Shown here piece by piece: positions 1,066 through 52,311 of a stretch of DNA of 64,000 nt. The position numbers and the translations under genes were made by a program. Origin of the DNA: Scyliorhinus canicula (lineage: Eukaryota). Under the pieces are notes generated by a model. That model was not told the origin of the DNA. It was given only the letters and a program-made list of their open reading frames with translations, and made no database searches. Each line of letters begins with the position of its first letter. The stretch's first letter is position 1. The DNA lies in the NCBI RefSeq assembly GCF_902713615.1, contig NC_052158.1, forward strand, positions 52,918,823-52,982,822, given 5' to 3'.

Positions 1066-1261
1066 ACTCACAGAGAGACTGCGGTCCAGTCACATAGAAC
1101 ATGGTTAATACCCCAGTACCCAGACACGGAGACCCTCTCTGACCCCATTACCCACTGAGGGTTAATACCCCAGTACCCAGACACTGAGACCCTCTCTGAC
1201 CCCATTACCCACTGACTGAGGGTTAATACCCCAGTACCCAGACACTGAGACCCTCTCTGTG

Positions 1262-1935: not shown

Positions 1936-2513
1936 TACCCAGACACTGAGACCCTCTCTGACCCCATTACCCACTGACTGAGGGTTAATACCCCAGTACC
2001 CAGACACAGACCCTCTCTGACCCCATTACTCACTGACTGAGGGTTAATACCCCAATACCCAGACACTGACACTCTCTCTGACCCCATTACCCACTGACTG
2101 AGGGTTAATACCCCAGTACCCAGACACTGACACCCTCTCTGACCCCATTACCCACTGACTGAGGGTTAATACCCCAGTACCCAGACACAGACCCTCTCTG
2201 ACCCCATTAGTCACTGACTGAGGGTTAATACCCCAGTACCCAGACAGTGACCCTCTCTGACCCCATTACTTACTGACTGAGGGTTAATACCCCAGTACCC
2301 AGACACAGACCCTCTCTGACCCCATTAGTCACTGACTGAGGGTTAATACCCCAGTACCCAGACACTGTGACCCTCTCTGACCCCATTACCCACTGACTGA
2401 GGGTTAATACCCCAGTACCCAGATACTGAGGCCCTCTCTGACCCCATTACTCACTGACTGAGCTAATACCCCAGTACCCAGACACTGAGACCCTGTCTGA
2501 CCCCATTACTCAC

Positions 2514-2562
2514 CTGCAGAGACCGCTCCACACAGAATGACAAGCAACATTAATCTCCTCAT
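2514..2562 (-). CDS. Leader (signal peptide) exon 1 of an MHC class I-like heavy-chain gene
   Basis: Minus strand ATG AGG AGA TTA ATG TTG CTT GTC ATT CTG TGT GGA GCG GTC TCT GCA G|GTGAGT = MRRLMLLVILCGAVSA plus phase-1 donor. Hydrophobic core with small-residue cleavage site; X-Y modules upstream; class I-type tail exons at the other end of the window. The lineage cannot be assigned from the leader. Confidence 0.75.
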
Positions 2563-2678
2563 TGTTGCTTCCCTGGACAGTGTTTGGTGAGGTTTTGTTT
2601 GATGAGGTTGCGGAAAATCCTCATCGAACAGACAGCCGCTGTTGATCCTGTCCTATTGGTTTACTGGTAAATCAGTCT

Positions 2679-2720
2679 CCAATTGGAATAAAGAGTCTGT
2701 TTGAGCCATCAGTCTCTGAG
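2679..2720 (-). promoter_or_regulatory. Proximal X-Y-like module
   Basis: Minus strand CTCAGAGACTGATG (2707-2720), 20 nt, CCAATTGG (2679-2686); same spacing as the distal module. Confidence 0.55.
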
Positions 2721-2758
2721 TAGAAGAGGTTTGGATAGGTTGCGTTAGTGAAAATTAT

Positions 2759-2800
2759 CCAATCAGAAAAATACTTTCAATTACATCATCAGTCGCTGTG
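2759..2800 (-). promoter_or_regulatory. MHC SXY-type X1/X2-Y module (RFX/CREB/NF-Y)
   Basis: Minus strand CACAGCGACTGATG-ATGTAATTGAAAGTATTTTT-CTGATTGG: X1-like 14-mer, CRE-like TGATGTAA, perfect Y box after a 20-nt spacer, as in mammalian MHC promoters (consensus recalled, not aligned). Confidence 0.8.
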
Positions 2801-2857: not shown

Positions 2858-3070
2858 TAAAGAACATTCGGAACAGCGAGAGACCATTCAGCCCCTCGGG
2901 CCCTGCTGCACCATCCAATCAGATCCTGACTGATCTGTGTATGAACTCCATTTACTCCATATTCCCTCATACTCCAACCCAACAACAATCTGAGCCTGAA
3001 AATATCCAATTGTTCCAAATTCCACAGCGGCAACCCTTTGAGTGAAAATAGCTTCTCTATGTCTGTCCTA
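2858..3070 (-). mobile_element. Degenerate CR1 3' end
   Basis: AGAACAT...GGAACAG...GACCATTCAGCCCCTCG pattern of reverse-complemented CR1 tails seen elsewhere in the window. Confidence 0.5.
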
Positions 3071-6869: not shown

Positions 6870-7991
6870 AGGAGTACAACCTCTGCACCTGCGCAGTGTG
6901 TGTTTCGGCCGCTTCATTATCCCATTCGCATCGCGCATGCGTCGCGTCCCGGGAAGAGCGCGCAAAATGGCCGCTTTCATCAATGTTGAGGCGTTGCATC
7001 CGGGAGATGGTCTGCACACTCTCCGCCTCGTGGGAGGCTAGTTTATCATTTTCTGCCATTTTGTACTGGGAATAGCGATTTTCAGCGTGCTCATGCACAG
7101 TGCGTGTTTCAATCGCGACTGGCAGGGTCATATCCTCTCTGAGGATCAGAGTGAACTCCAAAAACGATTTGGTCTCTGATCATGGAGTCAGTGATACCAC
7201 TGAAGTTGCGGGATTGCACTAGCAGTCTAAGGTTAGTTAAGTATGAGTTGAAGGATTCGTCTTTACCTTGCAATTGCTGCTTGAATATGTAGCGCTCGAA
7301 GATCTCGTTGGTGTCCACCTCACAGTGGCTGTCAAACTTGTCCAGGATGGTCTGAAACTTTGTCTTGCCGTAGTCTTCGGCGAAGTGGAAGGAGTTGAAT
7401 ATTTCCAAGGCATGATCACCAGCTGTGGTGAGGAAAAGAGCTATCTTCCGTGCATCAGGCACACCATTGAGGTCTGATGCCTCGACGTAAAGCTGAAATT
7501 TCTGCTTGAATGTCCGCCAGTTGGCACTGAGATTGCCGGAGGTCCTGAGCTGGTGAGGAGCCTGAATCTTTTCCATTGTGCCGGTATACATTCGCTGGTT
7601 GTCACGGATCTTGTTGAGTTGAACTAATTAGACTGAACAGACACCTAGTATCATGTTGTGTTATGTAATTTGGAATGACACAAGCTGCCACTTGATGCAG
7701 TTTTGAGTAAAAGATGCTCCAGATGTTTTATTGAACTATTAGCACAGTTCTCAATGAGTTTGACTCTCTGCTAATCAAAATGTAGTAACTCAGTCTAACT
7801 GAACCAGCCTTGCTCTAAGCCACGTGCTGGGGTGTGATGCTGAGGATATGCCCTGTCTCACTCTGTAGATCTTGGTCTGTGGAAAGTGCCTCACCCCTTT
7901 TATCGTGAGACACCACCCCTCAGTGTCCTGACTGTTCATTGGTCGTGTCCTATTCTATTTGTTCATTAGCTGCATTTTGCATATCATGACA
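6870..7991 (-). mobile_element. gag: Gypsy family A 5' fragment: LTR (7654-7991), degenerate PBS, gag
   Basis: TG..CA bounded LTR followed on the minus strand by TGATACTAG; ORF 7109-7591 (QLRTSGNLSANWRTFKQKFQLY..MIRDQIVFG) homologous to gag at 8980 and 51666. Confidence 0.85.
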
Positions 7992-8190
7992 GGAGAGACT
8001 CTGTGGGGGAGACACTGAGGCAGGGAGGTACTCTGAAAGGAGGACACACTGCGGGGGAGAGATACTCTTGAGGCTGGGAGACAGTCTGAATGGGGAGACA
8101 CTCTGAAAGGAGGGATACACTGACAGGAAGAGAGATACTCTGAGGGGGAGGGAGACACTCTGAGGGGAGAGACACTCTGAGGCAGGCAAC
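7992..8190. repeat. Degenerate ~20-25 bp purine-rich tandem repeat
   Basis: Recurrent GAGACACTCTGAGGGGA motif. Confidence 0.7.
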
Positions 8191-9294
8191 ACTAAGTGGG
8201 TTTTGTAACATCTCTGACACCCAACTACCTGTTGCTGTTTTTGAAATAACAGCAACAAGATTTAAATCCTGGTTTGTGAGAGATTCTGCTGAATAGAAAC
8301 CAGTTTGATCAACAACTTCCTGAATGAGTTCAGGGACTTTCCAACTGAGAGAAACAGAAGGGAGGGGCAGAGACTGGGGAAATCCAGATAAAACTAGACT
8401 GAAGAGTGGGAGGAGATTGTGAACAGTGGTTAGGATTTGTAACAGGCTCATAGAAATCACAGAGAACTCAACTCAACTGTCCTCACTTGGGGGTGTGTGG
8501 GGTGTCATAATATACATCCATGTATATGACGGAGTGCAGACAAGCAGTGGTTGACACACAGGATGACCAGTGAGCACAGAGAACACAGCAGCCAATCACC
8601 AGACAGGACACTATAAAGCCAGAGGGCACCAGTTTTCCCGCTCTCTTGGGATCCAGCCTCTGAGACAGTCAGAGCTCGTGAGCAGCAACTAGAACAAACA
8701 CCATGTGGAAGTCAGTTAGTCTGGTCAGGTTAGCCTCAGGTCCCCAGTCAAGTCAGCATAGTGTCAACCCACAGTTGAGCATGTAATATAGTTAGATGTT
8801 AAATAAAATTGTGTTGCATCTCATCCAGTGTTTGAAGCCTGTCTCTCTCTACACTGCATCAAATGCAGTCCACATAGACCCAGCTTACCCAACACACAAT
8901 GGTACCAGGTCTGGATGTTGAGAATTGATGGACTCACCTTGAGGTAATCTACCTTGACCAGCAATCAGCCATCCGGTAACATGGACAGCATCCGCCCTCC
9001 TCCGCAGCTCCGCATCGCCGGCAACCTCGGTGAAAACTGGGATAGTTTCAAGCAGAACTTCCAGCTGTATCTTGAAGCTACTGACCTCAAGGCCGCATCA
9101 GATGCCAGGAAGATCGCACTCTTCCTTTCTACAGCCGGGGACCACGCTATCCACATCTACAACTCCCTCACATTCGCTGAAGGCGAAGACAAGGCGAAAT
9201 TTAAAACAGTCCTGCTGAAGTTGGACAGCCACTGCAACATTGAGGTGAATGAGAGCTTTGAACGGTACATTTTCCAGCAGAGGCTTCAGGGTAG

Positions 9295-9560
9295 AACATA
9301 GAACATAGAACATAGAACAGTGCAGCACAGAACAGGCCCTTCGGTCCCCAATGTTGTGCCGAGCCATGATCACCCTACTCAAACCCACGGATCCACCCTA
9401 TACCCGTAACCCAACAACGCCTCCCCTAACCTTACTTTTTAGGACACTACGGGCAATTTAGCATGGCCAATCCACCTAACCCGCACATCTTTGGACTGTG
9501 GGAGGAAACCGGAGCACCCGGAGGAAACCCACGCACACAGGGGGAGGACGTGCAGACTCC
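9295..9560 (-). mobile_element. 5'-truncated V-SINE in Gypsy gag
   Basis: (AGAACAT)n tail plus reverse core; gag resumes after an imperfect CAGGGTA/CAAGGTA duplication. Confidence 0.88.
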
Positions 9561-12440
9561 AAGGTAAGGATGAACCTTTTCAGTCCTTTTTGACCCATCT
9601 CCGCATCCTCGCGCAGTCATGTAACTATGACTCGACAACTGATTCCATGATCCAGGATCAGATCGTTTTCGGGGTCCACTCCGATTCCCTTTGCCAGGAG
9701 CTCCTGAAAGTTAAGCAGCTCACCCTCACCATCGCCATTGAAACGTGTGTTCTTCACGAGCACGCTAACAACCGGTACTCCCACATCAGGGCGGCAGAAA
9801 CGGAAAAGTTAAACCCCCACGATGCAGAATGGGTGCAGGCTATCGCATCTTGATGACAGTGGCCATTTTGCGCGCTTTTCCCTGGCTCCAGCGCATGCGC
9901 ACCATGACCGAGGGGACGGTGAGACCGACGACCAGCCTGCGCAGATGCGTACATCGTTCCACCGCACTGCGCATGCATGTTGGCGCACGGAACGCGCTGA
10001 CGTCGGTGTCATGACGTGTCTGAATTGTGGCTCCGCCCATTTAAAACAGCAATGTCCGGCAAAATCACAACACTGTCTCCAGTGTGGCAAGCTTGGCCAC
10101 TACGCAGCTCTTTGCAGATCTGCTCCACTGCCCAACATCCAGCAATCCCAGCCACGGCGCAGAAGCGTCCGTTCGGTACAGCAACTCTCACAGACTCCGA
10201 TCCCGACAGCCCACCAGATGCTGAGTGCCTCAAAACCCCATTCCGGGTGGGCATCATTACTAAGCATGCGCTGCCTCTCTCAACGATGGTGAAACACCTC
10301 CCAATCCTGAGCATTGATCCGGAAAACGAGTAGTGTGCTACCCTTACTGTTCGCATCCGTTTCAAACTGGACACCGGCGCTTCAGCAAACCTCACTTCAA
10401 AATCTGACCTTGACACCATCCGCGTCAGACCAAGCATTCTTCTACCGGCCTGCCAGCTCCTCGACTACAATGGCAATGCCATTGCTGCCAGTGGCTCATG
10501 CCAGCTTGCGGTGTCCATTAGGTCATTGAAAGCAACGCTGTAATTTGAAATCGTAGGCCCTGACAGAGCATCCCTGCTCGGTGCTCGGGCCTGACAGAGC
10601 ATCCCTGCTCGGTGCTCGGGCCTGCAAACTCCTGAACCTGGTTCAGCGAGTCCACACCATGTCATCCGCACAGGCAACGGCCTCACCTGATGAAAACTTC
10701 CAGGCTCAACTTGATGACATCATAGCGAAATACCAGAGCGTGTTCGAAGGTATGGGCACACTCCCATACAGATACAAAATCCTGCTTGAGCCAAACGCTA
10801 CCCTTGTGGTTCATGCACCGTGTTGGGTGCCGGCACCCCTCAAGGATCGCCTCAAGCAGCAGTTGCAAGACCTCCAGGACCAGGGCATCAAATCAAAGGT
10901 CACGGAACCCACGGACTGGGTTAGCTCCATGGTTTGCGTCAAGAAACTGTCAGGGGAGCTTCGAATCTGTATCGACACCAAGATTTAAACCGCAACATCA
11001 TGAGGGAACATTACCTAATACCAAAATGAGAGGAGTTAACCAGCGAGGTTGCTCATGCCAAATTCCTCACGAAGCTGGATGTCTACAAGGGGTTCTGGCA
11101 AATACAGCTGGACACGTCCAGTCACAAGCTGTGCACATTCAATACCCCATTCGGTCATTACTGCTACAACCGAATGCCCTTTGGCATCATCTCTGCCTCA
11201 GAGGTATTTTACTGCATCATGGAACAAATGATGGAGGGCATCGAGGTAGAGCGAGTGTACGTCGACGATGTGATAATCTGGTCCACAACTCCTCAAGAAC
11301 ACATTGATTGCCTCAACCGGGTGTTCCACAGGATCCACGAGCATGGCCTCCGACTCAACAGGGCCAAATGCTCATTCGGTCAATCAGAAATCAAATTCCT
11401 CGGCGACCACATCTCGCAACAAGGCGTGCAGCTGGATGCTGACAACGTTTCGGCGATCAACGCCATGAAGACCCCAGAGGACAAGAAGGCGGTCCTCCGC
11501 TTTCTAGGGATGGTCACCTTCCTTGGGAAGTTCATCCCCAACATGGCGTCCCACACCACAGCCCTCCGCCATCTCGTTAGAAAAACGACGGATTTCCAGT
11601 GGCTGCCCGCTCATGAGAAAGAATGGCGTGAGCTAAGGGCGAAACTCACCAAGGCCACGGTGCTGGTATTTTCCGACCCTGCCAAGGAAATAAAAATAGC
11701 CACTGAAGCGAGCCAGGATGGTATTGGGGCAGTACTCCTCCAGCGGGATCCCTCCTGGGCCCCAGATGCAGATGCCTCTAGAGCTATGACGTCCACTGAG
11801 CAACGATACGCTCAGATTGAGAAGGAATGCCTGGGCCTCCGGACGGGAATCGACACGTTCCATGATTATGTATATGGCCTCCCCTAATTCACGGTTGAGA
11901 TGGACCACAGGCCATTGGTTCACATCATCCAAAAAGACCTCAATGACATGACGCCACGGTTACAACGCATCCTTCTCAAGCTGCGCCGCTACGATTTTGA
12001 CCTGGTTTACACCCCGGGCAAAGAGATCTTTGTTGCCCATGCACTCTCCAGGTCTATCAACACACTGTGTGAGCAGACTGACATTGTCTGTCAAATAAAC
12101 GCGCAGGTGCAATTCTGTGCCTCCAACTTCCCGGCCTCTGATGAGAGGGTCATTCAAATTCGTGAGGAGACGGCCAGGGATCCTCTGCTCCAGTGGGTGA
12201 TGCAACACCTCATGAATGGCTGGCAGAAGGGGCAGTGTCCCCAGTTTTACAATGTCAAGGACGATCTGACGGTGGTCGGCGGCATCCTCATGAAGCTTGA
12301 CAGAATTGTGATCCCACAGAGCATGTGAGATTTGGTGCTCGGCCAAATGCACGAGGGTCACCTGGGGGTCGGGAAATGTCGCCGTCGAGCTCAAGAGGCA
12401 GTATACTGGCCAGACATCAGCCAAGACGTCGCCAATACGG

Positions 12441-12803
12441 CAGCACGGTAGCATTGTAGGGCAGCACGGTAGCATTGTGGATAGCACAATCGCTTCACAG
12501 CACCAGGGTCCCAGGTTCGATTCCGGCTTGGGTCACTGTCTGTGCGGAGTCTGCACATCCTCCCCGTGTGTGCGTGGGTTTCCTCCGGGTGCTCCGGTTT
12601 CCTCCCACAGTCCAAAGATGTGCAGGTTAGGTGGATTGGCCATGCTAAATTACCCTTAGTGTCCAAAATTTCCCTTAGTGTTGGGTGGGGTTACTGGGTT
12701 ATGGTGATAGGGTGGAGGTGTTGACATTGGGTAGGATGCTCTTTCCAAGAGCCGGTGCAGACTCGATGGGCCGAATGGCCTCCTGCACTGTAAATTCTAT
12801 GTA
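12441..12803 (+). mobile_element. V-SINE with duplicated 5' head, in Gypsy pol
   Basis: TSD AATACGG at 12434-12440 and 12804-12810. Confidence 0.92.
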
Positions 12804-13677
12804 AATACGGTCCTCAATTGCCCTACCTGTCAAAACTTCCAGCCGGCTCAGCCTAAAGAAACTCTACAGCAACATGAGATGGTGACCTCCCCATGGTCCA
12901 AAGTCGGTGTTGACCTGTTCCATGCCAAGGGGCGTGACTATGTCCTCCTAGTGGACTGCTTTTCCAATTATCCCGAAGTGGTCAGACTGTCTGACCACAC
13001 GTTGGCGGCGGTGATCAAGGCATGCAAGGAAACTTTTTCCCGACATGGGATACCACTCACGGTGATGAGTGACAACGGCCCCTGTTTTTTCAGACAGGAT
13101 TGGTCAGATTTTGCCAGGCTGTACAACTTTCAGCACGTCACATCCAGCCCCCACTACCCCCAGTCGAATGGGAAGGTTGAAAAATACATCGTCAAAAGAT
13201 TATTGTGTAAGGCTGCTGACTCGGGCTCCGATTTCAACCTGGCGCTGTTGGCATACAGAGCGACCCCTCTGTTCACTGGGTTGTCTCCAGCACAGCTCCT
13301 CATGAACCGCACACTGCGAATGACGGTTCCGGCCATCGAACACAGCAGCCAATCACCAGACAGGACACAACCACTATAAAGCCAGAGGGTACCAGTTTTC
13401 CCGCTCTCTGGGGATCCAGCCTCTGAGACAGTCAGAGCCCGTGAGCAACAGCCAGTGCAAACACCATGTGGTAGTCAGTAAGTCTGGTCAGGCTAGCCTC
13501 AGGTCTCCAGTCAAGTCAGCATAGTGTCAACCCACAATTAAGCATATAATATAGTTAGATGTTAAATAAAATTGTGTTGTATCTCATCAAGTGTTGGAAG
13601 CGTGTCTCTCTCTATATTGCATCAAACGCAGTCCACATTGACCCAGCTTACCCAACACATCATGGGGTAATGCCTGT

Positions 13678-45294: not shown

Positions 45295-46887
45295 TTAGTA
45301 AGGCCACACTTGGAATACTGTGTACCGTTCTGGTCACCCTATTATAGAAAGTATATTATTAAACTAGAAAGAGTGCAGAAAAGATTTACTAGGATGCTAC
45401 CGGAACTTTATGGTTTGAGTTATAAGGAAAGGCTGGATAGACTGAGACTTTTTTCCCTTTGCGTAGGATGATCTTATGGAGGTCTATAAAATAATGAGGG
45501 GCATAGATAAGGTAGCATGGCTGGAACCTTTGACACGTTGGGCAATTGAGGACTGTGTTGGCGATATCTTGGCTGATGTCTGACCAATATACTGCCTCTC
45601 GGGCTCGACGGTGATACTTTTCGACACCCAGGTGACGCTCGTGGATTTGGCCGAGGACCAACTTTCGCATGCTCTGTGGGATCACAATTCTGTCCAGCTC
45701 CATTAGTATGCCGGCCACTACCGCTAAATCGCCCTTTACATTATAAAACTGGGGGGGACTGACCCTTTTGTCAACCATCCGGGAGATGGCGCATGACCCG
45801 CTGGAGTAGAGGATCCCTGGCGGTCTCCTGATGAATTTGCACAACCCTTTCATCAGTGACCGGAAAGTTGGAGGCACAGAATTGCACCTGCGCATCTATC
45901 TGACAGACAATGTCAGTCTGCTCACACGGTGTGGTGATAGATCTGGAGAGTGCATCGGCCAAAATAAGCTCTTTGCCCGGGTTGTACACCAGGTCGAAAT
46001 CGTAGCGGCGGAGTTTGAGGAGGATACGTTGTAACCCTGGCGTCATGTCATTGAGGTCTTTTTGGATGATGTGAACCAATGGCCTGTGGTCCGTCTCGAC
46101 CATGAATTTGGGGAGGCCATACACGTAATCATGGAACATGTCGATCCCGGTAAGGAGGCCCAGGGATTCTTTTTCAATCTGAGCGTATCGTTGCTCAGTG
46201 GACGTCATGGCTCTAGAGGCATATGCAACTGGGGCCCAGGAGGAGGAGTCGTCCCACTGGAGGAGCACTGCCCCAATGCCAGCCTGGCTCGCGTCGGTGG
46301 ATATTTTTGTTTCCTTGGCGGGGTCGAAAAACGGCAGCACCGGGGTGAGTTTCGCCCTGAGCTCACGCCACTCTTGCTGATGAGCGGGGAGCCACTGGAA
46401 GTCCGTAGTTTTTTTAACGAGATTGTGGAGAGCTGTGGTGTGTGATGCAAGGTTGGGGATAAACTTCCCAAGGAAGTTGACCATCCCTAGGAAGCGGAGG
46501 ACCGCCTTCTTGTCCTCCAGGCTCTTCATGGCGTTGATCGCCGACACCTTGTCTGCATCCGGCTGCACGCTGAATTGCGAAATGTGGTCGCCGAAAAATT
46601 TGATTTCTGATTGACCGAACGAGCATTTGGCTCTGTTGAGTCAGAGGTCATGCTCGTGGATCCTGTGGAACACCCGCTTGAGACGATCAATGTGCTCCTG
46701 AGGAGTTGTGGACCAGACAATGATGTGATCGATGTCCACTCGCACCCCCTCGATGCCCTCCATCATTTGTTCCATTATGCGGAGATGATGCCAAAGGGCA
46801 TTCGGTTGTAACAGTAGCGACCGAATGAGGTGTTGAATGTGCACAGCTTTCGACTGGACGCGTCCAGCTGTATTTGCCAAAACCCAA

Positions 46888-47110
46888 GGGCAGCACAGTG
46901 GCACAGTGGTTAGCATTGCTGCCTACGGCGCTGAGGACCCGGGTTCGAATTCCGGCCCTGGGTCACTGTCCATGTGGAGTTTGCACATTCTCCCCGTGTC
47001 TGTGTGGGCTTCGCCCCCACAACCCAAAGATGTGCAGGTTAGGTGAATTGGCCACGCTAAATTGCCCCTTAATTGGAAAAAATAATTGGGTACTCTAAAT
47101 TTAAAAAAAA
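46888..47110 (+). mobile_element. V-SINE variant with A-rich tail
   Basis: 16-bp TSD GTATTTGCCAAAACCC at 46870-46885 and 47111-47126. Confidence 0.9.
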
Positions 47111-47585
47111 GTATTTGCCAAAACCCCTTGGAGGCATCCAGGTTCGTGAAGAGTTTGGCATGAGACATCTCGCTGGTTAGCTCTTCTCATTTGGGTATTG
47201 AGTAGTGTTCCCTCATGATGTTACAGTTCAAATCTTTGGGGTTGATACAGATTTGAAGTTCCCCTGATCGCTTTTTGACACAAACCATGGAGCTGACCCA
47301 GTCCGTGGGTTCCGTGACCTTAGAAATGACGCCCTGGTCCTGGAGGTCTTGCAGCTGCTGCTTGAGGCGGTCCTTAAGGGGTGCCGGCACCCGATGCGGT
47401 GCGTGAACCACAGGGGTGGCATTTGGCTTCAACAGGATTTTGTATCGGTAGGGGTGTGTGCCCATACCTTCGAACACGCTGTGGTATTGTGCTATGAAGT
47501 CATCGAGTTGGGCCTGGAAGTCAACATCTGGCGAGGCTGTTGCCTCTGCGGACGACATGGTGTGAACCCGCTGCACCAGGTTCTA

Positions 47586-49635
47586 CATAAGAACATAAGA
47601 ACATAAGAACTAGGAGCAGGAGTAGGCCATCTGGCCCCTCGAGCCTGCTCCGCCGTTCAATTAGATCATGGCTGATCTTTTGTAGACTCAGCTCCACTTT
47701 CCGGCCCGAACACCATAACCCTTAATCACTTTATTCTTCAAAAAACTTCTATCTTTACCTTAAAAACATGTAATGAAGGAGCCTCAACTGCTTCACTGGG
47801 CAAGGAATTCCATAGACTCACAACCCTTTGGGTGAAGAAGTTCCTCCTAAACTCAGTCCTAAATCTACTTCCCCTTATTTTGAGGCTATGTCCCCTAGTT
47901 CTGCTGTCACCCGCCAGTGGAAACAACCTGCCCGCATCTATCCTCTCTATTCCCTTCATAATTTTAAATGTTTCTATAAGATCTCCCCTCATCCTTCTAA
48001 ATTCCAACGAGTACAGTCCCAGTCTACTCAACCTCTCCTCATAATCCAACCCCTTCAGGTCTGGGATTAACCTAGTGAATCTCCTCTGCACACCCTCCAG
48101 CGCCAGTATGTCCTTTCTCAAGTAAGGAGACCAAAACTGAACACAATACTCCAGGTGTGGCCGCACTAACACCTTATACAATTGCAACATAACCTCCCTA
48201 GTCTTAAACTCCATCCCTCTAGCAATGAAGGACAAAATTCCATTTGCCTTCTTAATCACCTGTTGCACCTCTAAACCAACTTTCTGTGACTCATGCACCA
48301 GCACACCCAGGTCTCTCTGCACAGTGGCATGCTTTAATATTTTATCGTTTAAATAATAATCCCGTTTGCTGTTATTCCTACCAAAATGGATAACCTCACA
48401 TTTGTCAACATTGTATTCCATCTGCCAGACCCTAGCCCATTCACAACCTATCCAAATCCCTCTGCAGACTTCCAGTATCCTCTGCACTTTTCGCTTTACC
48501 ACTCATCTTAGTGTCATCTGCAAACTTGGACACATTGCCCTTGGTCCCCAACTCCAAATCATCTATGTAAATTGTGAACAATTGTGGGCCCAACACGGAT
48601 CCCTGAGGGATACCACTAGCTACTGATTGCCAACCAGAGAAACACCCATTAATCCCCACTCTTTGCTTTCTATTAATTAACCAATCCTCTATCCATGCTA
48701 CTACTTTACCCTCAATGCCATGCATCTTTATCTTATGCAGCAACCTTTTGTGTGGAAACCTTTCTGGAAATCCAGTTATACCACATCCATTGGCTCCCCA
48801 TTATCTACTGCACTGGTAATGTCCTCAAAAAATTCCACTAAATTAGTTAGGCATAAACTGCCCTTTATGAACCCATGCTGCATCTCCCCAATGGGACAAT
48901 TTCTATCCAGATGCCTCGCTATTTCTTCCTTGATGATAGATTCCAGTATCTTCCCTACTACCGAAGTTAAGCTCACTGGCCTATAATTTCCTGCTTTCTG
49001 CCTACCTCCTTTTTTAAACAGTGGTGTCACGTTTGCTAACTTCCAATCCACCGGGACCACCCCAGAGTCTAGTGAATTTTGGTAAATTATGACTAGTGCA
49101 TCTGCAATTTCCCTAGCCATCTCTTTTAGCACTCTGGGATGTATTCCATCAGGGCCAGGAAACAATCGCGGATACATTCTATAAACTCCTCCTCAAGGTT
49201 GCCTTGACCGACCTGGTTAAACCAATCGACATGTAGATTAAAATCCCCCATGATAACTGCTGTACCATTTCTACATGCATCAGTTATTCCTTTGTTTATT
49301 GCCTGCCCCACCATAATGTTACTATTTGGTGGCCGATAGACTACTCCTATCAGTGACTTTTTCGCCTTACTCTTCCTGATTTCCACCCAAATGGTTTCAA
49401 CCTTATCCTCCATAGCACCAATGTCATCCCTTACTATTGCCCGGATGTCATCCTTAAATAGTTCCGAATAGTTTGATACCCTCGGATATTTAACTCCCAG
49501 TCGTGACCATCCTTTAACCATGTTTCAGTAATGGCCACTAAATCATAGTCATTCACGATGATTTGTGCCATCAACTCATTTACTTTATTCCGAATACTAC
49601 GGGCATTCAGGTAAAGTACACTTATGTTGGTTTTT
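47586..49635 (-). mobile_element. CR1 ORF2 remnant with internal deletions
   Basis: YLNARSIRNK, GDFN, PGPDG, PQGSVLGP, FADD, LVRPHLEYCV; (ATAAGAAC)n tail. Confidence 0.9.
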
Positions 49636-49639
49636 TTTT

Positions 49640-50263
49640 GGAGCTCAATTCTCACCCCCCACCACGCCGCGTGGGAGAATCGCGGGGGCGCCGGGTCAGT
49701 TCCGCCACGCCGCCCCGGCACTCGCATGCGATTTTCCCACCCCCCACAAACCGGCGCGCCGAGATTTACGGCTGGCTGCAGCCTGGATGGGCCTAGCGGT
49801 CTGCCCAATATGACGTGATCACGCCGGCGCCTATCACACCTGGTCGCTGACGGCGTAAACAGCGCGGGGACGCTGCAAGGGTGGCCTGTGGGGGAGAGGG
49901 GGGATCGAGCACCGGGGGGGCACTCAAAAGGGGACTGGCCCATGATTGGTGCCCACCAATCGGCGGGCCAGCCTCTCTGAGAGATCCAGTCCTTTCCTCC
50001 ACCGCTCCGCAAAATCACTCCGACATTTCTTGCCCGCGGGGAGGACGGCAACCACGCATGTGCGGGTTGGCGCCGGCCAACCTGCACATGCGCGGGTGAC
50101 GTCATTTACGTGGATTTATGCGGCGCCGCTTTAATGCGGCGCCAAGTCCCGCCCCCCCCCCCCCCCCCCCCCCCCCGAGGAGCGGCCTCCGACACCGGAA
50201 TGAAACACTCTGGTTTTCACTCTGGCGTCGGCACTTAGTCCCTCGTTGGGAGAATCCTGCCCC
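49640..50263. mobile_element. GC-rich MITE
   Basis: Right TIR GGAGAATCCTGCCCC, degenerate left TIR. Confidence 0.7.
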
Positions 50264-52311
50264 AGGAGTTTGCAGGCCCGAGCACCGAGCAGGGAATCTC
50301 TGTTGGTTCCTACAATTTCAAAATCCAGCTTTGCTTTTGAAGAACGATGGGACACCGCAAGCTGGCATGAGCCACTGGCAGCAATGGCATTGCCATTGTA
50401 GTCGAGGAGCTGGCAGGCCGGTGGAATAATGCTTGGCTTGACGCGGATGGTGTCAAGGTCAGACTTTGATATGAGGTTTGCTGAAGCGCCGGTGTCCAGC
50501 CTGAAGCGTATGCGAGCCTTGTTGACCGTAAGGGTGGCACACCACTCGTCCAGATCAATTATCATTATTGGGAGTTGTTTCACCATCGTTGCTGAAGGCA
50601 GCGTATGCTTGGTGATGATGCTGACCCGGAATGGTGATGTGAGGCCCTCAGTGTCGGGACCTGGTAGACTGTCGGGGTCAGAGTCTGTGACGGGTTGCGG
50701 TACTGACCGGACGCTCCTGCGCTGTGGCTGGAATTGCTGTGTGTTGGGCAGTGGAGCAGATCTACAAAGGGCTGCGTAGTGGCCAAGTTTGCCACACTAG
50801 AGACAGCGTCGAGATTTTGGGGGACATTGCCACTTTACATGGGCAGAGCCACAGTTGGAACATGTCATGGCGCCGCCGTCAGGACGTTCCGTGCGCCACC
50901 GCGCATGTGCAGTGCGGTCGAACGACGTGCGCACTTGCACGGTTTGGTCATCGGCGTTACCGTCCCCTCGGTCGTGGCGCGCATGCGCTGGAGCCTGGGA
51001 AAAGCACGCAAAATGGCCGCCCTCATCCAGACTTAGGCCCTGCATTTGTTTGATGGCCTGCACCTGTTCTGCCTCGTGTGGGGTTTGCCTTGCTGTTTCT
51101 GCCGCCTTGATATGGGAGTACCAGTTGTTGGCGTGCTCATGAAGGACACAGGTCTCGATGGCGATGGTGAGGGTGAGCTGCTTGACTTTTAGGAGCTGCT
51201 GGCGAAGGGGATCGGAGTGGACCCCGAAAATCTGATCCCGGATCATGGAATCAGAAGTGGAGCCATAGTTGCAGGACTGCGCGAGGATGCGGAGATGGGT
51301 TAAAAAGGACTGAAAAGGTTCATCCTTACCCTGAAGCCTCTGCTGGAACATATAGCATTCAAAGCTCTCATTGACCTCGATGCCACAGTGGCTGTCGAAC
51401 TTCAGCAGAACTGTTTGAAACTTCGTCTTGTCCTCGCCTTCGGCAAAGGTGAGGTAGTTGAAGATGTGGATAGCGTGGTCCCCGGCTGTAGAGAGGAAGA
51501 GAGCGATCTTCCTGGCATCCGATGCGGCCTCAAGGTCAGTTCCTTCAAGATATAGCTGGAACTTCTGCTTGAAAATCTTCCAGTTGGCACCGAGGTTGCC
51601 GGCGATGCGGAGCTGCGGAGGAGGGCGGACGCTGTCCATGTTACCGGATGGCTGATTGCTGGTCAAACGCAGCTTATCTCAAGGTAACTCGAGCATAACT
51701 CACTGGTACCATGATGTGTTGGGTAAGCTGGATCTACGAGGGCTGCGTTTACTGCAGCAGTGAGAGAGACAGGCTTCCAACACTTGAAGAAATGCAACTC
51801 GATTTTATTGAACACTTAACTATCATGCATGCTTTAACTGTGGGTTGATACTATGCTGACTTGACTGGAGACCTGAGGCTAACCTGACCAGACTATCTTA
51901 CTACCACATGGTGTATGTTCTAGTTGCTGCTCACGAGCTCTGACTATCTCAGAGGCTGGGGATCCCAAGAGAGCGGGAAAACTAGTGCCCTCTGGCTTTA
52001 TAGTGGTCGTGTCCTGTCTGGTGATTGGCTGCTGTGTTCTGTGTGTTCATTGGTCATCCTGTGTGTCAATCACTGCCTGTCTGCACTCCATCATATACCT
52101 GGATGCATATTATGACACTGCCTTCTTGAACTGCTGCAGTCTATGTGTAGGTACACCCACTGGGCAGTTAGGAAGAGAGTTCTTGGATTTTGACCCTGTG
52201 ACTCTGAATGAACTGCGATATATTTTCAAGTCCGGACAGTGAGTGACTTGGGAGGGAATCTCCAGGTGGTGGCATTCCCATGAATCTAGGCCCTTGTCCT
52301 TCTAGATAGTT

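What the first reader, a model, noticed from the sequence alone, without database searches (positions are those of the whole stretch)
2679..2800. Doubled X-Y promoter module with class II-like geometry ahead of a class I-like leader
Two X-like 14-mers, 80 bp apart, are each followed after exactly 20 nt by an ATTGG Y box. The distal copy (AGCGACTGATGATGTAATTGAA..TATTTTTCTGATTGG) closely resembles mammalian class II DRA/DRB X-Y sequences as I recall them. A tandem module might bind two RFX/NF-Y complexes, and bears on whether CIITA-type or NLRC5-type control is ancestral.
Basis: partly seen in the sequence, partly recalled or inferred. Interest (0 to 1): 0.7.

Follow-up and report, generated by a model that had tools for sequence, protein, structure and literature searches.

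The report
Two-part shark MHC class I promoter
Just upstream of a shark MHC class I gene's first exon lie two real copies of the X-Y control motif that switches on antigen-presentation genes in mammals: one looks like the class II version and the other like the class I version, which is a tidy but not revolutionary sign of how old this control system is.

Summary
On the minus strand, two GACTGATG-N23-ATTGG units lie exactly 80 bp apart (X 2797-2784 with Y 2763-2759; X 2717-2704 with Y 2683-2679). They are the only such pair in the window and sit 117-200 bp upstream of an ATG at 2562.

RNA contigs from two studies splice this leader exon (donor at 2513) onto a sequence that reads GSHSLHYFYT. 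The gene is therefore an expressed MHC class I gene. Its body lies off-window; earlier scan notes call it a catshark non-classical class I gene.

The two units are not simple copies of each other.
- **Distal unit:** its X1X2 box matches published mouse H2-Eb at 13 of 14 positions, and its Y box (CTGATTGG) is identical. It has no S box.
- **Proximal unit:** it is a complete class I-type S-X-Y module with the spacing of mouse H2-K, spans 65 bp, and is followed by a CCAAT box.

The 20-nt X-Y spacing is not specific to class II. The longest RNA contigs start near 2705, inside the proximal unit, so that unit is transcribed in at least some mRNAs, and two start zones are possible.

This is a new variant of a known kind. 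The scan has already noted SXY-type modules elsewhere in this genome. Protein binding, the exact transcription starts and conservation in other genes were not tested.

The parts
2784..2797 (-). Distal X1X2 box, AGCGACTGATGATG. It has a class II flavour: the RFX half-site is AGCGAC and a CRE-like TGATGTAA overlaps at 2788-2781.
   Evidence: It matches the mouse H2-Eb X1X2 box (AGCAACTGATGATG), taken from published primers, at 13 of 14 positions.
2759..2766 (-). Distal Y box, CTGATTGG (an inverted CCAAT, the NF-Y type of site). It lies 20 nt after the distal X 14-mer.
   Evidence: It is identical to the H2-Eb Y box. The spacing was checked.
2747..2758 (-). AT-rich stretch ATAATTTTCACT. It looks like a TATA box and also like half an ISRE (TTTCACT, as in the H2-K ISRE). 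This is a weak motif-level call.
   Evidence: Read from the sequence and compared with the H2-K primer sequence. No statistical test was run.
2733..2743 (-). S/W-box core GCAACCTATCC of the proximal module. Its ACCT starts exactly 23 nt before the X box.
   Evidence: Both H2-K and H2-Eb have the same 23-nt offset. None of 60 random sequences gave X + Y + S together.
2704..2717 (-). Proximal X box, AGAGACTGATGGCT. It has a class I flavour: its half-site has A at the third position, as in H2-K GGACAC. An Inr-like CTCAGA overlaps it at 2720-2715.
   Evidence: It matches the mouse X code at 11 of 14 positions. In the ATTGG-anchored test against H2-K it scores 29 of 60, rank 1 of 334.
2679..2686 (-). 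Proximal Y box inside the palindrome CCAATTGG. Its ATTGG (2683-2679) lies 20 nt after the proximal X 14-mer.
2671..2680 (-). Third X-like element, GGAGACTGAT. It overlaps the proximal Y box and does not have the X-Y spacing.
2655..2659 (-). Forward CCAAT box, 19 nt after the proximal ATTGG.
   Evidence: The similar Y-then-CCAAT layout in human class I promoters is recalled from memory only.
2612..2621 (-). NF-kB-like AGGATTTTCC within the 5' UTR. This is a motif-level call only.
2559..2624 (-). Upstream ORF of 21 codons. Its ATG is at 2624 and its stop overlaps the main ATG. It is present in every contig that reaches beyond 2624.
   Evidence: Translation; contig extents.
2513..2705 (-). Exon 1 as assembled from RNA: 5' UTR plus leader. 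The coding part is 2562-2514 (MRRLMLLVILCGAVSA). The donor GT is at 2513-2512; base 2513 fits on either side of the join.
   Evidence: X1 contig covers 2705-2513 and X4 contig covers 2652-2513. Both then jump to sequence that reads GSHSLHYFYT.

Best explanation
Window 2640-2800 (minus strand) is the composite promoter of an expressed shark MHC class I gene. Earlier scan notes identify it as a catshark non-classical class I gene.

The promoter holds two enhanceosome-type units.
- The proximal unit is a full class I-type S-X-Y module, laid out like mouse H2-K. Its S core (AACCT) lies 23 nt before the X box, the Y box follows X by 20 nt, the module spans 65 bp, and a CCAAT box follows.
- The distal unit, 80 bp upstream, is an X1X2-Y unit without an S box. 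Its boxes are almost identical to those of a class II gene.

Inferred mechanism: each unit is bound by RFX, a CREB/ATF factor and NF-Y, which recruit an NLR co-activator (NLRC5 and/or CIITA; both exist in sharks).

Transcription starts at or above 2705, about 45-55 bp after the distal Y box. It probably also starts further downstream, after the proximal Y/CCAAT boxes. If so, the two units serve two start zones, and only the long mRNA form carries the proximal unit in its 5' UTR.

Shown here: the motifs, their spacing and their rarity; the class I identity of the gene; its splicing and expression; and RNA contig ends at 2705 and 2652. Inferred: protein binding, co-activator choice and the two start zones.
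For: - Two exact hits of the X-N23-Y pattern occur 80 bp apart, with 0.10 expected by chance.
- They are the only two X+Y matches in 128 kb to a code derived from mouse sequences alone. Only the proximal unit also has S at -23, which 0 of 60 null sequences showed.
- Published H2-K and H2-Eb SXY sequences were available for comparison. The distal X1X2 matches H2-Eb at 13 of 14 positions and the Y box at 8 of 8. Anchored at ATTGG, the proximal unit is the best of 334 placements against H2-K (29 of 60, z about 3.7).
- The proximal module spans 65 bp, within the published 59-68 bp range for SXY modules. SXY modules are typically within 300 bp of the start.
- The X-Y spacing of 20 nt lies within the 20-22 bp seen at NLRC5 targets.
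- Spliced RNA contigs from two studies join the leader to GSHSLHYFYT and reach 2705 and 2652.
- RNA-like runs hold at most 0.44 of the sampled words in 2600-2800, whereas DNA-like runs hold all of them.
- The whale shark has orthologues of both CIITA and NLRC5.
- In mammals the boxes and their spacing are conserved but the spacer sequence is not. The two shark units show the same pattern relative to each other.
Against: - No binding, chromatin or reporter data exist.
- The start sites come from ends of assembled contigs and from coarse word shares, not from CAGE. The supposed downstream start zone is the weakest point.
- At all NLRC5 targets in mouse the SXY module lies upstream of the start. 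Here the longest contigs begin inside the proximal module.
- The proximal X box matches the mouse code at only 11 of 14 positions, and its X2 part is poor.
- The distal unit has no recognisable S box, which in mammals is needed for co-activator specificity.
- The class I and class II 'flavours' rest on one mouse sequence of each kind.
- Conservation in paralogous or orthologous promoters could not be tested.
- The 80-bp offset is about 7.6 helical turns, so the two units are not in phase.
Confidence: 0.6

Rival explanations
1. Only the distal X-Y unit is the working promoter element. The main start lies near 2705-2720. The proximal S-X-Y is a decaying older promoter or duplicate that now lies in the 5' UTR and has no enhanceosome function.
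For: - The longest RNA contigs in about four runs from two studies stop at about 2705, some 54 bp after the distal Y box.
- The inferred contig ends of the other runs form a near-continuous series (about 2610 to 2705), as expected for truncated copies of one long form.
- The proximal X box is the weaker match, at 11 of 14.
Against: - The proximal unit keeps the S core, X and Y boxes at exactly the mammalian distances. It is the best H2-K-like placement in the window, which is not expected of a decaying relic.
- The distal unit lacks the S box that mammals need for NLRC5 or CIITA specificity.
Confidence: 0.2
2. Only the proximal S-X-Y-CCAAT module is the working class I promoter, with a start about 2600-2650. 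The distal X-Y unit is then an upstream enhancer or a stranded promoter core, like the orphan copies noted elsewhere in this genome. The long contigs would be minor upstream or read-in transcripts.
For: - The layout ISRE-half, S, X, Y, CCAAT matches the canonical class I order.
- By word share, seven of the 14 RNA-like runs that hold exon 1 seem to end near 2610-2635.
- Earlier scan notes report gene-less SXY copies 54 kb away. I did not test that claim.
Against: - Spliced contigs from two studies reach 2705, at depths similar to the rest of the mRNA.
- No RNA-like run extends past about 2718, which argues for a real start there and against read-through.
Confidence: 0.13
3. The motifs are chance matches in an AT-rich promoter and have no shared function.
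For: - Full-length ungapped identity to H2-K or H2-Eb does not single out this region.
- Local alignments to the mouse sequences are only modestly above shuffled controls (8 and 11 of 500).
Against: - Two exact hits of a 13-base gapped pattern lie 80 bp apart, directly upstream of a class I leader, with 0.10 expected.
- The 13-of-14 match to the H2-Eb X1X2 box is expected about 0.02 times in the window (my own estimate).
- An S core sits at the exact offset in the proximal unit.
Confidence: 0.03

Closest known systems
Mammalian MHC class I SXY module (NLRC5 enhanceosome), for example mouse H2-K
   Same: For the proximal unit:
- an ACCT-containing S core 23 nt before the X box
- an X half-site with A at its third position
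- the same X-to-ATTGG length as H2-K
- a 65-bp span
- an ISRE-like TTTCACT just upstream
- location in front of a class I leader exon
   Different: - The X2 (CRE) part is poor.
- The Y box sits in a CCAATTGG palindrome.
- The longest RNA contigs start inside the module, not downstream of it.
- A second X-Y unit precedes it.
Mammalian MHC class II X-Y box (CIITA enhanceosome), for example mouse H2-Eb or HLA-DR
   Same: For the distal unit:
- the X1X2 box matches at 13 of 14 positions
- the Y box CTGATTGG is identical
- the X-Y spacer is 20 nt, against 19 nt in H2-Eb
- from memory only, HLA-DRA has the same 20-nt spacer, ending in the same T-rich run
   Different: - It sits in front of a class I gene, not a class II gene.
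- No S box is found at the expected offset.
- The RFX half-site has G where class II genes have A (AGCGAC against AGCAAC).
Extra or distal SXY modules in mammals: distal SXY enhancers of the class II region, and the H2-T10/T22 promoters, which carry an additional Y-containing motif
   Same: More than one SXY-type element serves a single MHC gene or region.
   Different: The known distal modules lie kilobases away, or have unusual 45-48 bp spacings. Here two correctly spaced units sit 80 bp apart inside one core promoter, and they have different flavours.

Membership tests
MHC SXY enhanceosome module | X1 box (RFX site) followed directly by X2 (a CRE-like site) | tested here: met
   The distal unit matches the H2-Eb X1X2 box at 13 of 14 positions, including a CRE-like TGATGTAA. 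The proximal unit matches the mouse-derived code at 11 of 14, with a good X1 part and a poor X2 part.
MHC SXY enhanceosome module | Y box (inverted CCAAT) at a fixed distance of about 19-22 bp from the X box | tested here: met
   Both units have ATTGG exactly 20 nt after the 14-mer. The published range is 20-22 bp.
MHC SXY enhanceosome module | S/W box about 16 bp upstream of X, with the whole module spanning 59-68 bp | tested here: inconclusive
   The proximal unit meets this: ACCT lies 23 nt before the start of X, as in H2-K and H2-Eb, and the span is 65 bp. The distal unit does not: the expected position holds no ACCT, and only 5 of 27 upstream bases match H2-Eb (my own count).
MHC SXY enhanceosome module | Lies upstream of, and within about 300 bp of, the start of an MHC or antigen-presentation gene | tested here: inconclusive
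   The gene is class I, and both units lie within 240 bp of the ATG. The distal unit lies upstream of every RNA contig end. The proximal unit lies inside the longest contigs, which end at 2705. No CAGE data were available.
MHC SXY enhanceosome module | Occupied by RFX5/RFXAP/RFXANK, CREB/ATF and NF-Y, and dependent on CIITA or NLRC5 | not testable with these tools
   There are no ChIP, EMSA or reporter data. Only the presence of CIITA and NLRC5 orthologues in a shark is on record.
Class II-type (CIITA) versus class I-type (NLRC5) module | The S-box sequence is the main determinant of specificity, along with selected X-box positions | tested here: inconclusive
   The proximal S core and X third position agree with H2-K. 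The distal X agrees with H2-Eb, but the distal unit has no S box. The comparison rests on one reference sequence of each class.
Recent tandem duplication of one promoter unit | Sequence similarity extends across the whole repeat unit, not only across the binding boxes | tested here: not met
   The self-alignment is confined to about 18 nt around the X box, and 43 of 2000 shuffles scored as high. The spacers are unrelated. An old duplication in which only the boxes were kept is not excluded.

The most novel reading that the evidence does not exclude
The two units may be two separate promoters of different regulatory type in front of one class I gene.

A class II-flavoured X-Y unit would drive a start about 50 bp downstream of it (around 2705-2720). 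A class I-type S-X-Y-CCAAT unit would drive a second start about 50 bp downstream of it (around 2625-2635).

The long mRNA carries a 21-codon upstream ORF that overlaps the main ATG, and the short one may not. The choice of co-activator (CIITA-like or NLRC5-like) could then set both how much of the gene is transcribed and how well the message is translated. This would also show that the two module flavours were already distinct, and could be combined, in the common ancestor of sharks and mammals.
Probability: 0.2. Interest if true: 0.65.

Novelty: new variant of a known kind. Interest (0 to 1): 0.45.

Why it matters
SXY control of antigen-presentation genes is described almost entirely from mammals. 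I found no open paper describing X and Y boxes in a shark MHC promoter.

This promoter shows box sequences and spacings that match mouse class I and class II modules after about 450 million years. Both flavours sit in front of a single expressed class I gene. That makes it a compact, testable construct for asking whether shark NLRC5 and CIITA already discriminate between modules through the S box, and whether an upstream X-Y unit adds a second start site.

It does not by itself settle which type of control is ancestral.

Tried and rejected
1. Ungapped identity of the whole mouse H2-K (91 nt) and H2-Eb (88 nt) sequences along the window did not rank this promoter at the top; GC-rich repeats scored higher. 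Only box-anchored tests are informative.
2. Gapped local alignments to the mouse sequences were only modestly significant: 8 and 11 of 500 shuffles scored as high.
3. Aligning the two units to each other gave weak support for duplication (p about 0.02).
4. I looked for published text copies of the HLA-DRA and HLA-A promoter sequences. The 12-mer TTTTCTGATTGG is indexed in three older class II papers, but the held texts did not contain it. A search for a human class I S-box string found nothing relevant. Comparisons with human DRA and HLA-A are therefore from memory only.
5. Paralogue check: in the DNA-like run X15, at 80% likeness, only one contig covers 2513-3069, and it is identical. No second copy lies on 2560-2860. 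More distant paralogues could not be reached, and no tool here fetches other shark genomic DNA.
6. The raw-read RNA run X23 gave only about 2 reads on exon 1, so it offers no start-site information.
7. No convincing full ISRE, GAS or enhancer A was seen upstream of the distal unit by eye. This was not pursued.
8. The gene body lies off-window, so its non-classical nature was not checked.

Full report
**What is in the sequence.** The finding lies on the minus strand.

- Reading 5' to 3' on that strand, an ATG at 2562 opens a 16-codon signal peptide, MRRLMLLVILCGAVSA.
- The peptide ends at 2514 and is followed by a GT donor at 2513-2512.
- Intron 1 begins with a 59-bp tandem array at 1936-2513.
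- The rest of the gene lies beyond the start of the window.

- Distal unit: AGCGACTGATGATG (2797-2784), 20 nt, then ATTGG (2763-2759).
- Proximal unit: AGAGACTGATGGCT (2717-2704), 20 nt, then ATTGG (2683-2679).
- The two are 80 bp apart.
- A third GAGACTGAT (2679-2671) and a forward CCAAT (2659-2655) follow.

**Is it more than chance?**

- GACTGATG-N23-ATTGG has two exact hits in the window on both strands, and both are these units. With up to one mismatch allowed, 0.10 hits are expected, and no shuffle reached two.
- As a test independent of the shark sequence, I built an X-box code from the union of two published mouse sequences (RGMMACTGWTGAYG) and required ATTGG 32-35 nt after its start. 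Only these two sites in 128 kb pass at 11 of 14 or better; the null mean is 0.43.
- Only the proximal site also has ACCT at the S-box offset, which never happened in 60 random sequences.

**What gene is it?** Two runs that behave as RNA assemblies, from different studies, each hold a contig that covers exon 1 and then leaves the window exactly at the donor.

- The X1 contig is 754 nt long and covers 2705-2513.
- The X4 contig is 423 nt long and covers 2652-2513.
- The 30 letters reported beyond the junction, joined to exon 1, translate as MRRLMLLVILCGAVSA-GSHSLHYFYT. This is the hallmark start of an MHC class I alpha-1 domain.

The gene is therefore an expressed, spliced class I gene. An earlier scan note (s1-258576) places a non-classical class I gene body about 3.6-6 kb before the window start. 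That fits an intron 1 of roughly 6 kb, but I could not read that DNA. Species identity (small-spotted catshark) also comes only from earlier scan notes.

**Comparison with published mammalian modules.** Ludigs et al. 2015 (PMC4374748) print the primers used to build the mouse H2-K and H2-Eb SXY reporters. The complete modules can be assembled from them.

*Distal unit against H2-Eb:*
- The X1X2 box is AGCGACTGATGATG against AGCAACTGATGATG, a match at 13 of 14 positions.
- The Y box CTGATTGG is identical.
- The spacer is 20 nt against 19 nt.
- At the S-box position (ACCT 23 nt before X in both mouse genes) the distal unit has nothing similar. Only 5 of the 27 upstream bases match H2-Eb (my own count).

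*Proximal unit against H2-K:*
- An S core, GCAACCTATCC (2743-2733), has its ACCT exactly 23 nt before X.
- A shared CTTCT occupies the same position between S and X.
- The X half-site has A at its third position (AGAGAC against GGACAC), whereas class II genes have C there.
- The X-start-to-ATTGG length is the same (34 nt).
- Anchored at ATTGG, the 60 nt upstream match H2-K at 29 positions. This is the best of all 334 ATTGG-anchored placements in the window (mean 15.5, sd 3.6).
- From S to Y the module spans 65 bp, inside the published 59-68 bp range.
- Just upstream lies TTTCACT, the core of the H2-K ISRE. Downstream lies a CCAAT box, which reviews list as part of the class I core promoter.

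The two units are therefore not equivalent copies. The distal one is an S-less, class II-flavoured X-Y unit. The proximal one is a complete class I-type S-X-Y module.

**Geometry.** Ludigs et al. report Y boxes 20-22 bp from X at most NLRC5 targets, and H2-K has the same X-to-Y length as both shark units. The spacing therefore does not discriminate between the classes. According to that paper, the S box does.

**Are the units a duplication?** Alignment of the two 105-nt halves finds only about 18 nt around the X box (TACTCA..GACTGATG). Scores this high were reached by 2% of shuffles, and the spacers are unrelated. A recent tandem duplication is not supported. An old duplication in which only the boxes and their spacing were retained is possible, and mammalian class II promoters show that same pattern.

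**Where does transcription start?** Contig ends are not start sites, but they set lower bounds.

- X1 reaches 2705 and X4 reaches 2652.
- In a second search over 2600-2800, RNA-like runs hold at most 0.44 of the sampled words: X8 holds 0.44, X1 and X2 hold 0.39, and X3 holds 0.33. This corresponds to ends near 2690-2718. DNA-like runs hold 1.00.
- At least some mRNAs therefore begin at or just above 2705. That is inside the proximal X box, about 45-55 bp after the distal Y box, and close to an Inr-like CTCAGA (2720-2715).
- No RNA-like run extends over the distal unit.
- By word share, seven other runs from four studies seem to end near 2610-2635 (my own modelling, coarse). This could be a second start zone about 50 bp after the proximal Y box, or it could simply be truncated assemblies. 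I cannot decide between these.
- Contigs reaching beyond 2624 carry a 21-codon upstream ORF whose stop overlaps the main ATG.

**Paralogues.** In a DNA-like run laid at 80% likeness, a single identical contig covers 2513-3069. Nothing else lies on 2560-2860, while 2861-2957 attracts many repeat-derived contigs. The promoter is thus single-copy at that level, and a transposon fragment bounds it upstream. More distant paralogous promoters and other species could not be reached with these tools.

**Context.**
- Sharks have orthologues of both CIITA and NLRC5 (whale shark, PMC8455134).
- Distal or additional SXY modules are known in mammals.
- I found no open paper describing X and Y boxes in shark MHC promoters.
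- Earlier notes of this scan report SXY-type modules at several other places in this genome. These include orphan copies 54 kb away and a tandemly amplified ISRE-X-CCAAT module elsewhere. They are unchecked leads, but they indicate that such modules are common here.

**Verdict.** This is a real two-part MHC class I promoter.

- The best reading (0.6) is that both units are working enhanceosome sites of different flavour, with the distal one serving an upstream start.
- The rivals are that only the distal unit works (0.2), that only the proximal unit works (0.13), or that the motifs are chance matches (0.03).
- It is a new variant of a known kind, of moderate interest.

Comparisons with human HLA-DRA and HLA-A are from memory only and carry no weight in the scores. 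For HLA-DRA these are the same 20-nt spacer ending in a T-rich run before CTGATTGG. For HLA-A they are an AACCT S core and a Y-then-CCAAT layout.

Noticed in passing
window 1936-2513 and 1103-1259 (minus-strand intron 1): Intron 1 of the class I gene opens with about 10 copies of a 59-bp tandem repeat (92% matches). More copies lie further in, interrupted by SINE-like elements. Contigs made of this repeat appear in the RNA-like run X1 at a summed depth similar to that of the exon.
   Followed up: partly
window 2861-2957: A short interspersed-repeat fragment bounds the promoter upstream. Many diverged contigs from both RNA and DNA runs pile up on 2884-2936, at depths up to 180-275. The ATTGG at 2919 therefore belongs to a repeat, not to the promoter.
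   Followed up: partly
window 2594: The RNA contig of run X1 reads A where the window has T. This is a single-base difference in the 5' UTR, and none of the promoter boxes is affected.
   Followed up: no
window 2559-2624 (minus strand): A 21-codon upstream ORF has a stop that overlaps the main ATG. Its first seven bases (ATGAGGA) are the same as those of the main ORF.
   Followed up: partly
window about 7000-13400, 46000-51700 and 47700-49500: Most of the rest of the window is retroelement sequence. There are long gag/pol-like ORFs of LTR (gypsy-type) elements on both strands, and a LINE-type reverse-transcriptase ORF. No second MHC leader or SXY module was found.
   Followed up: no
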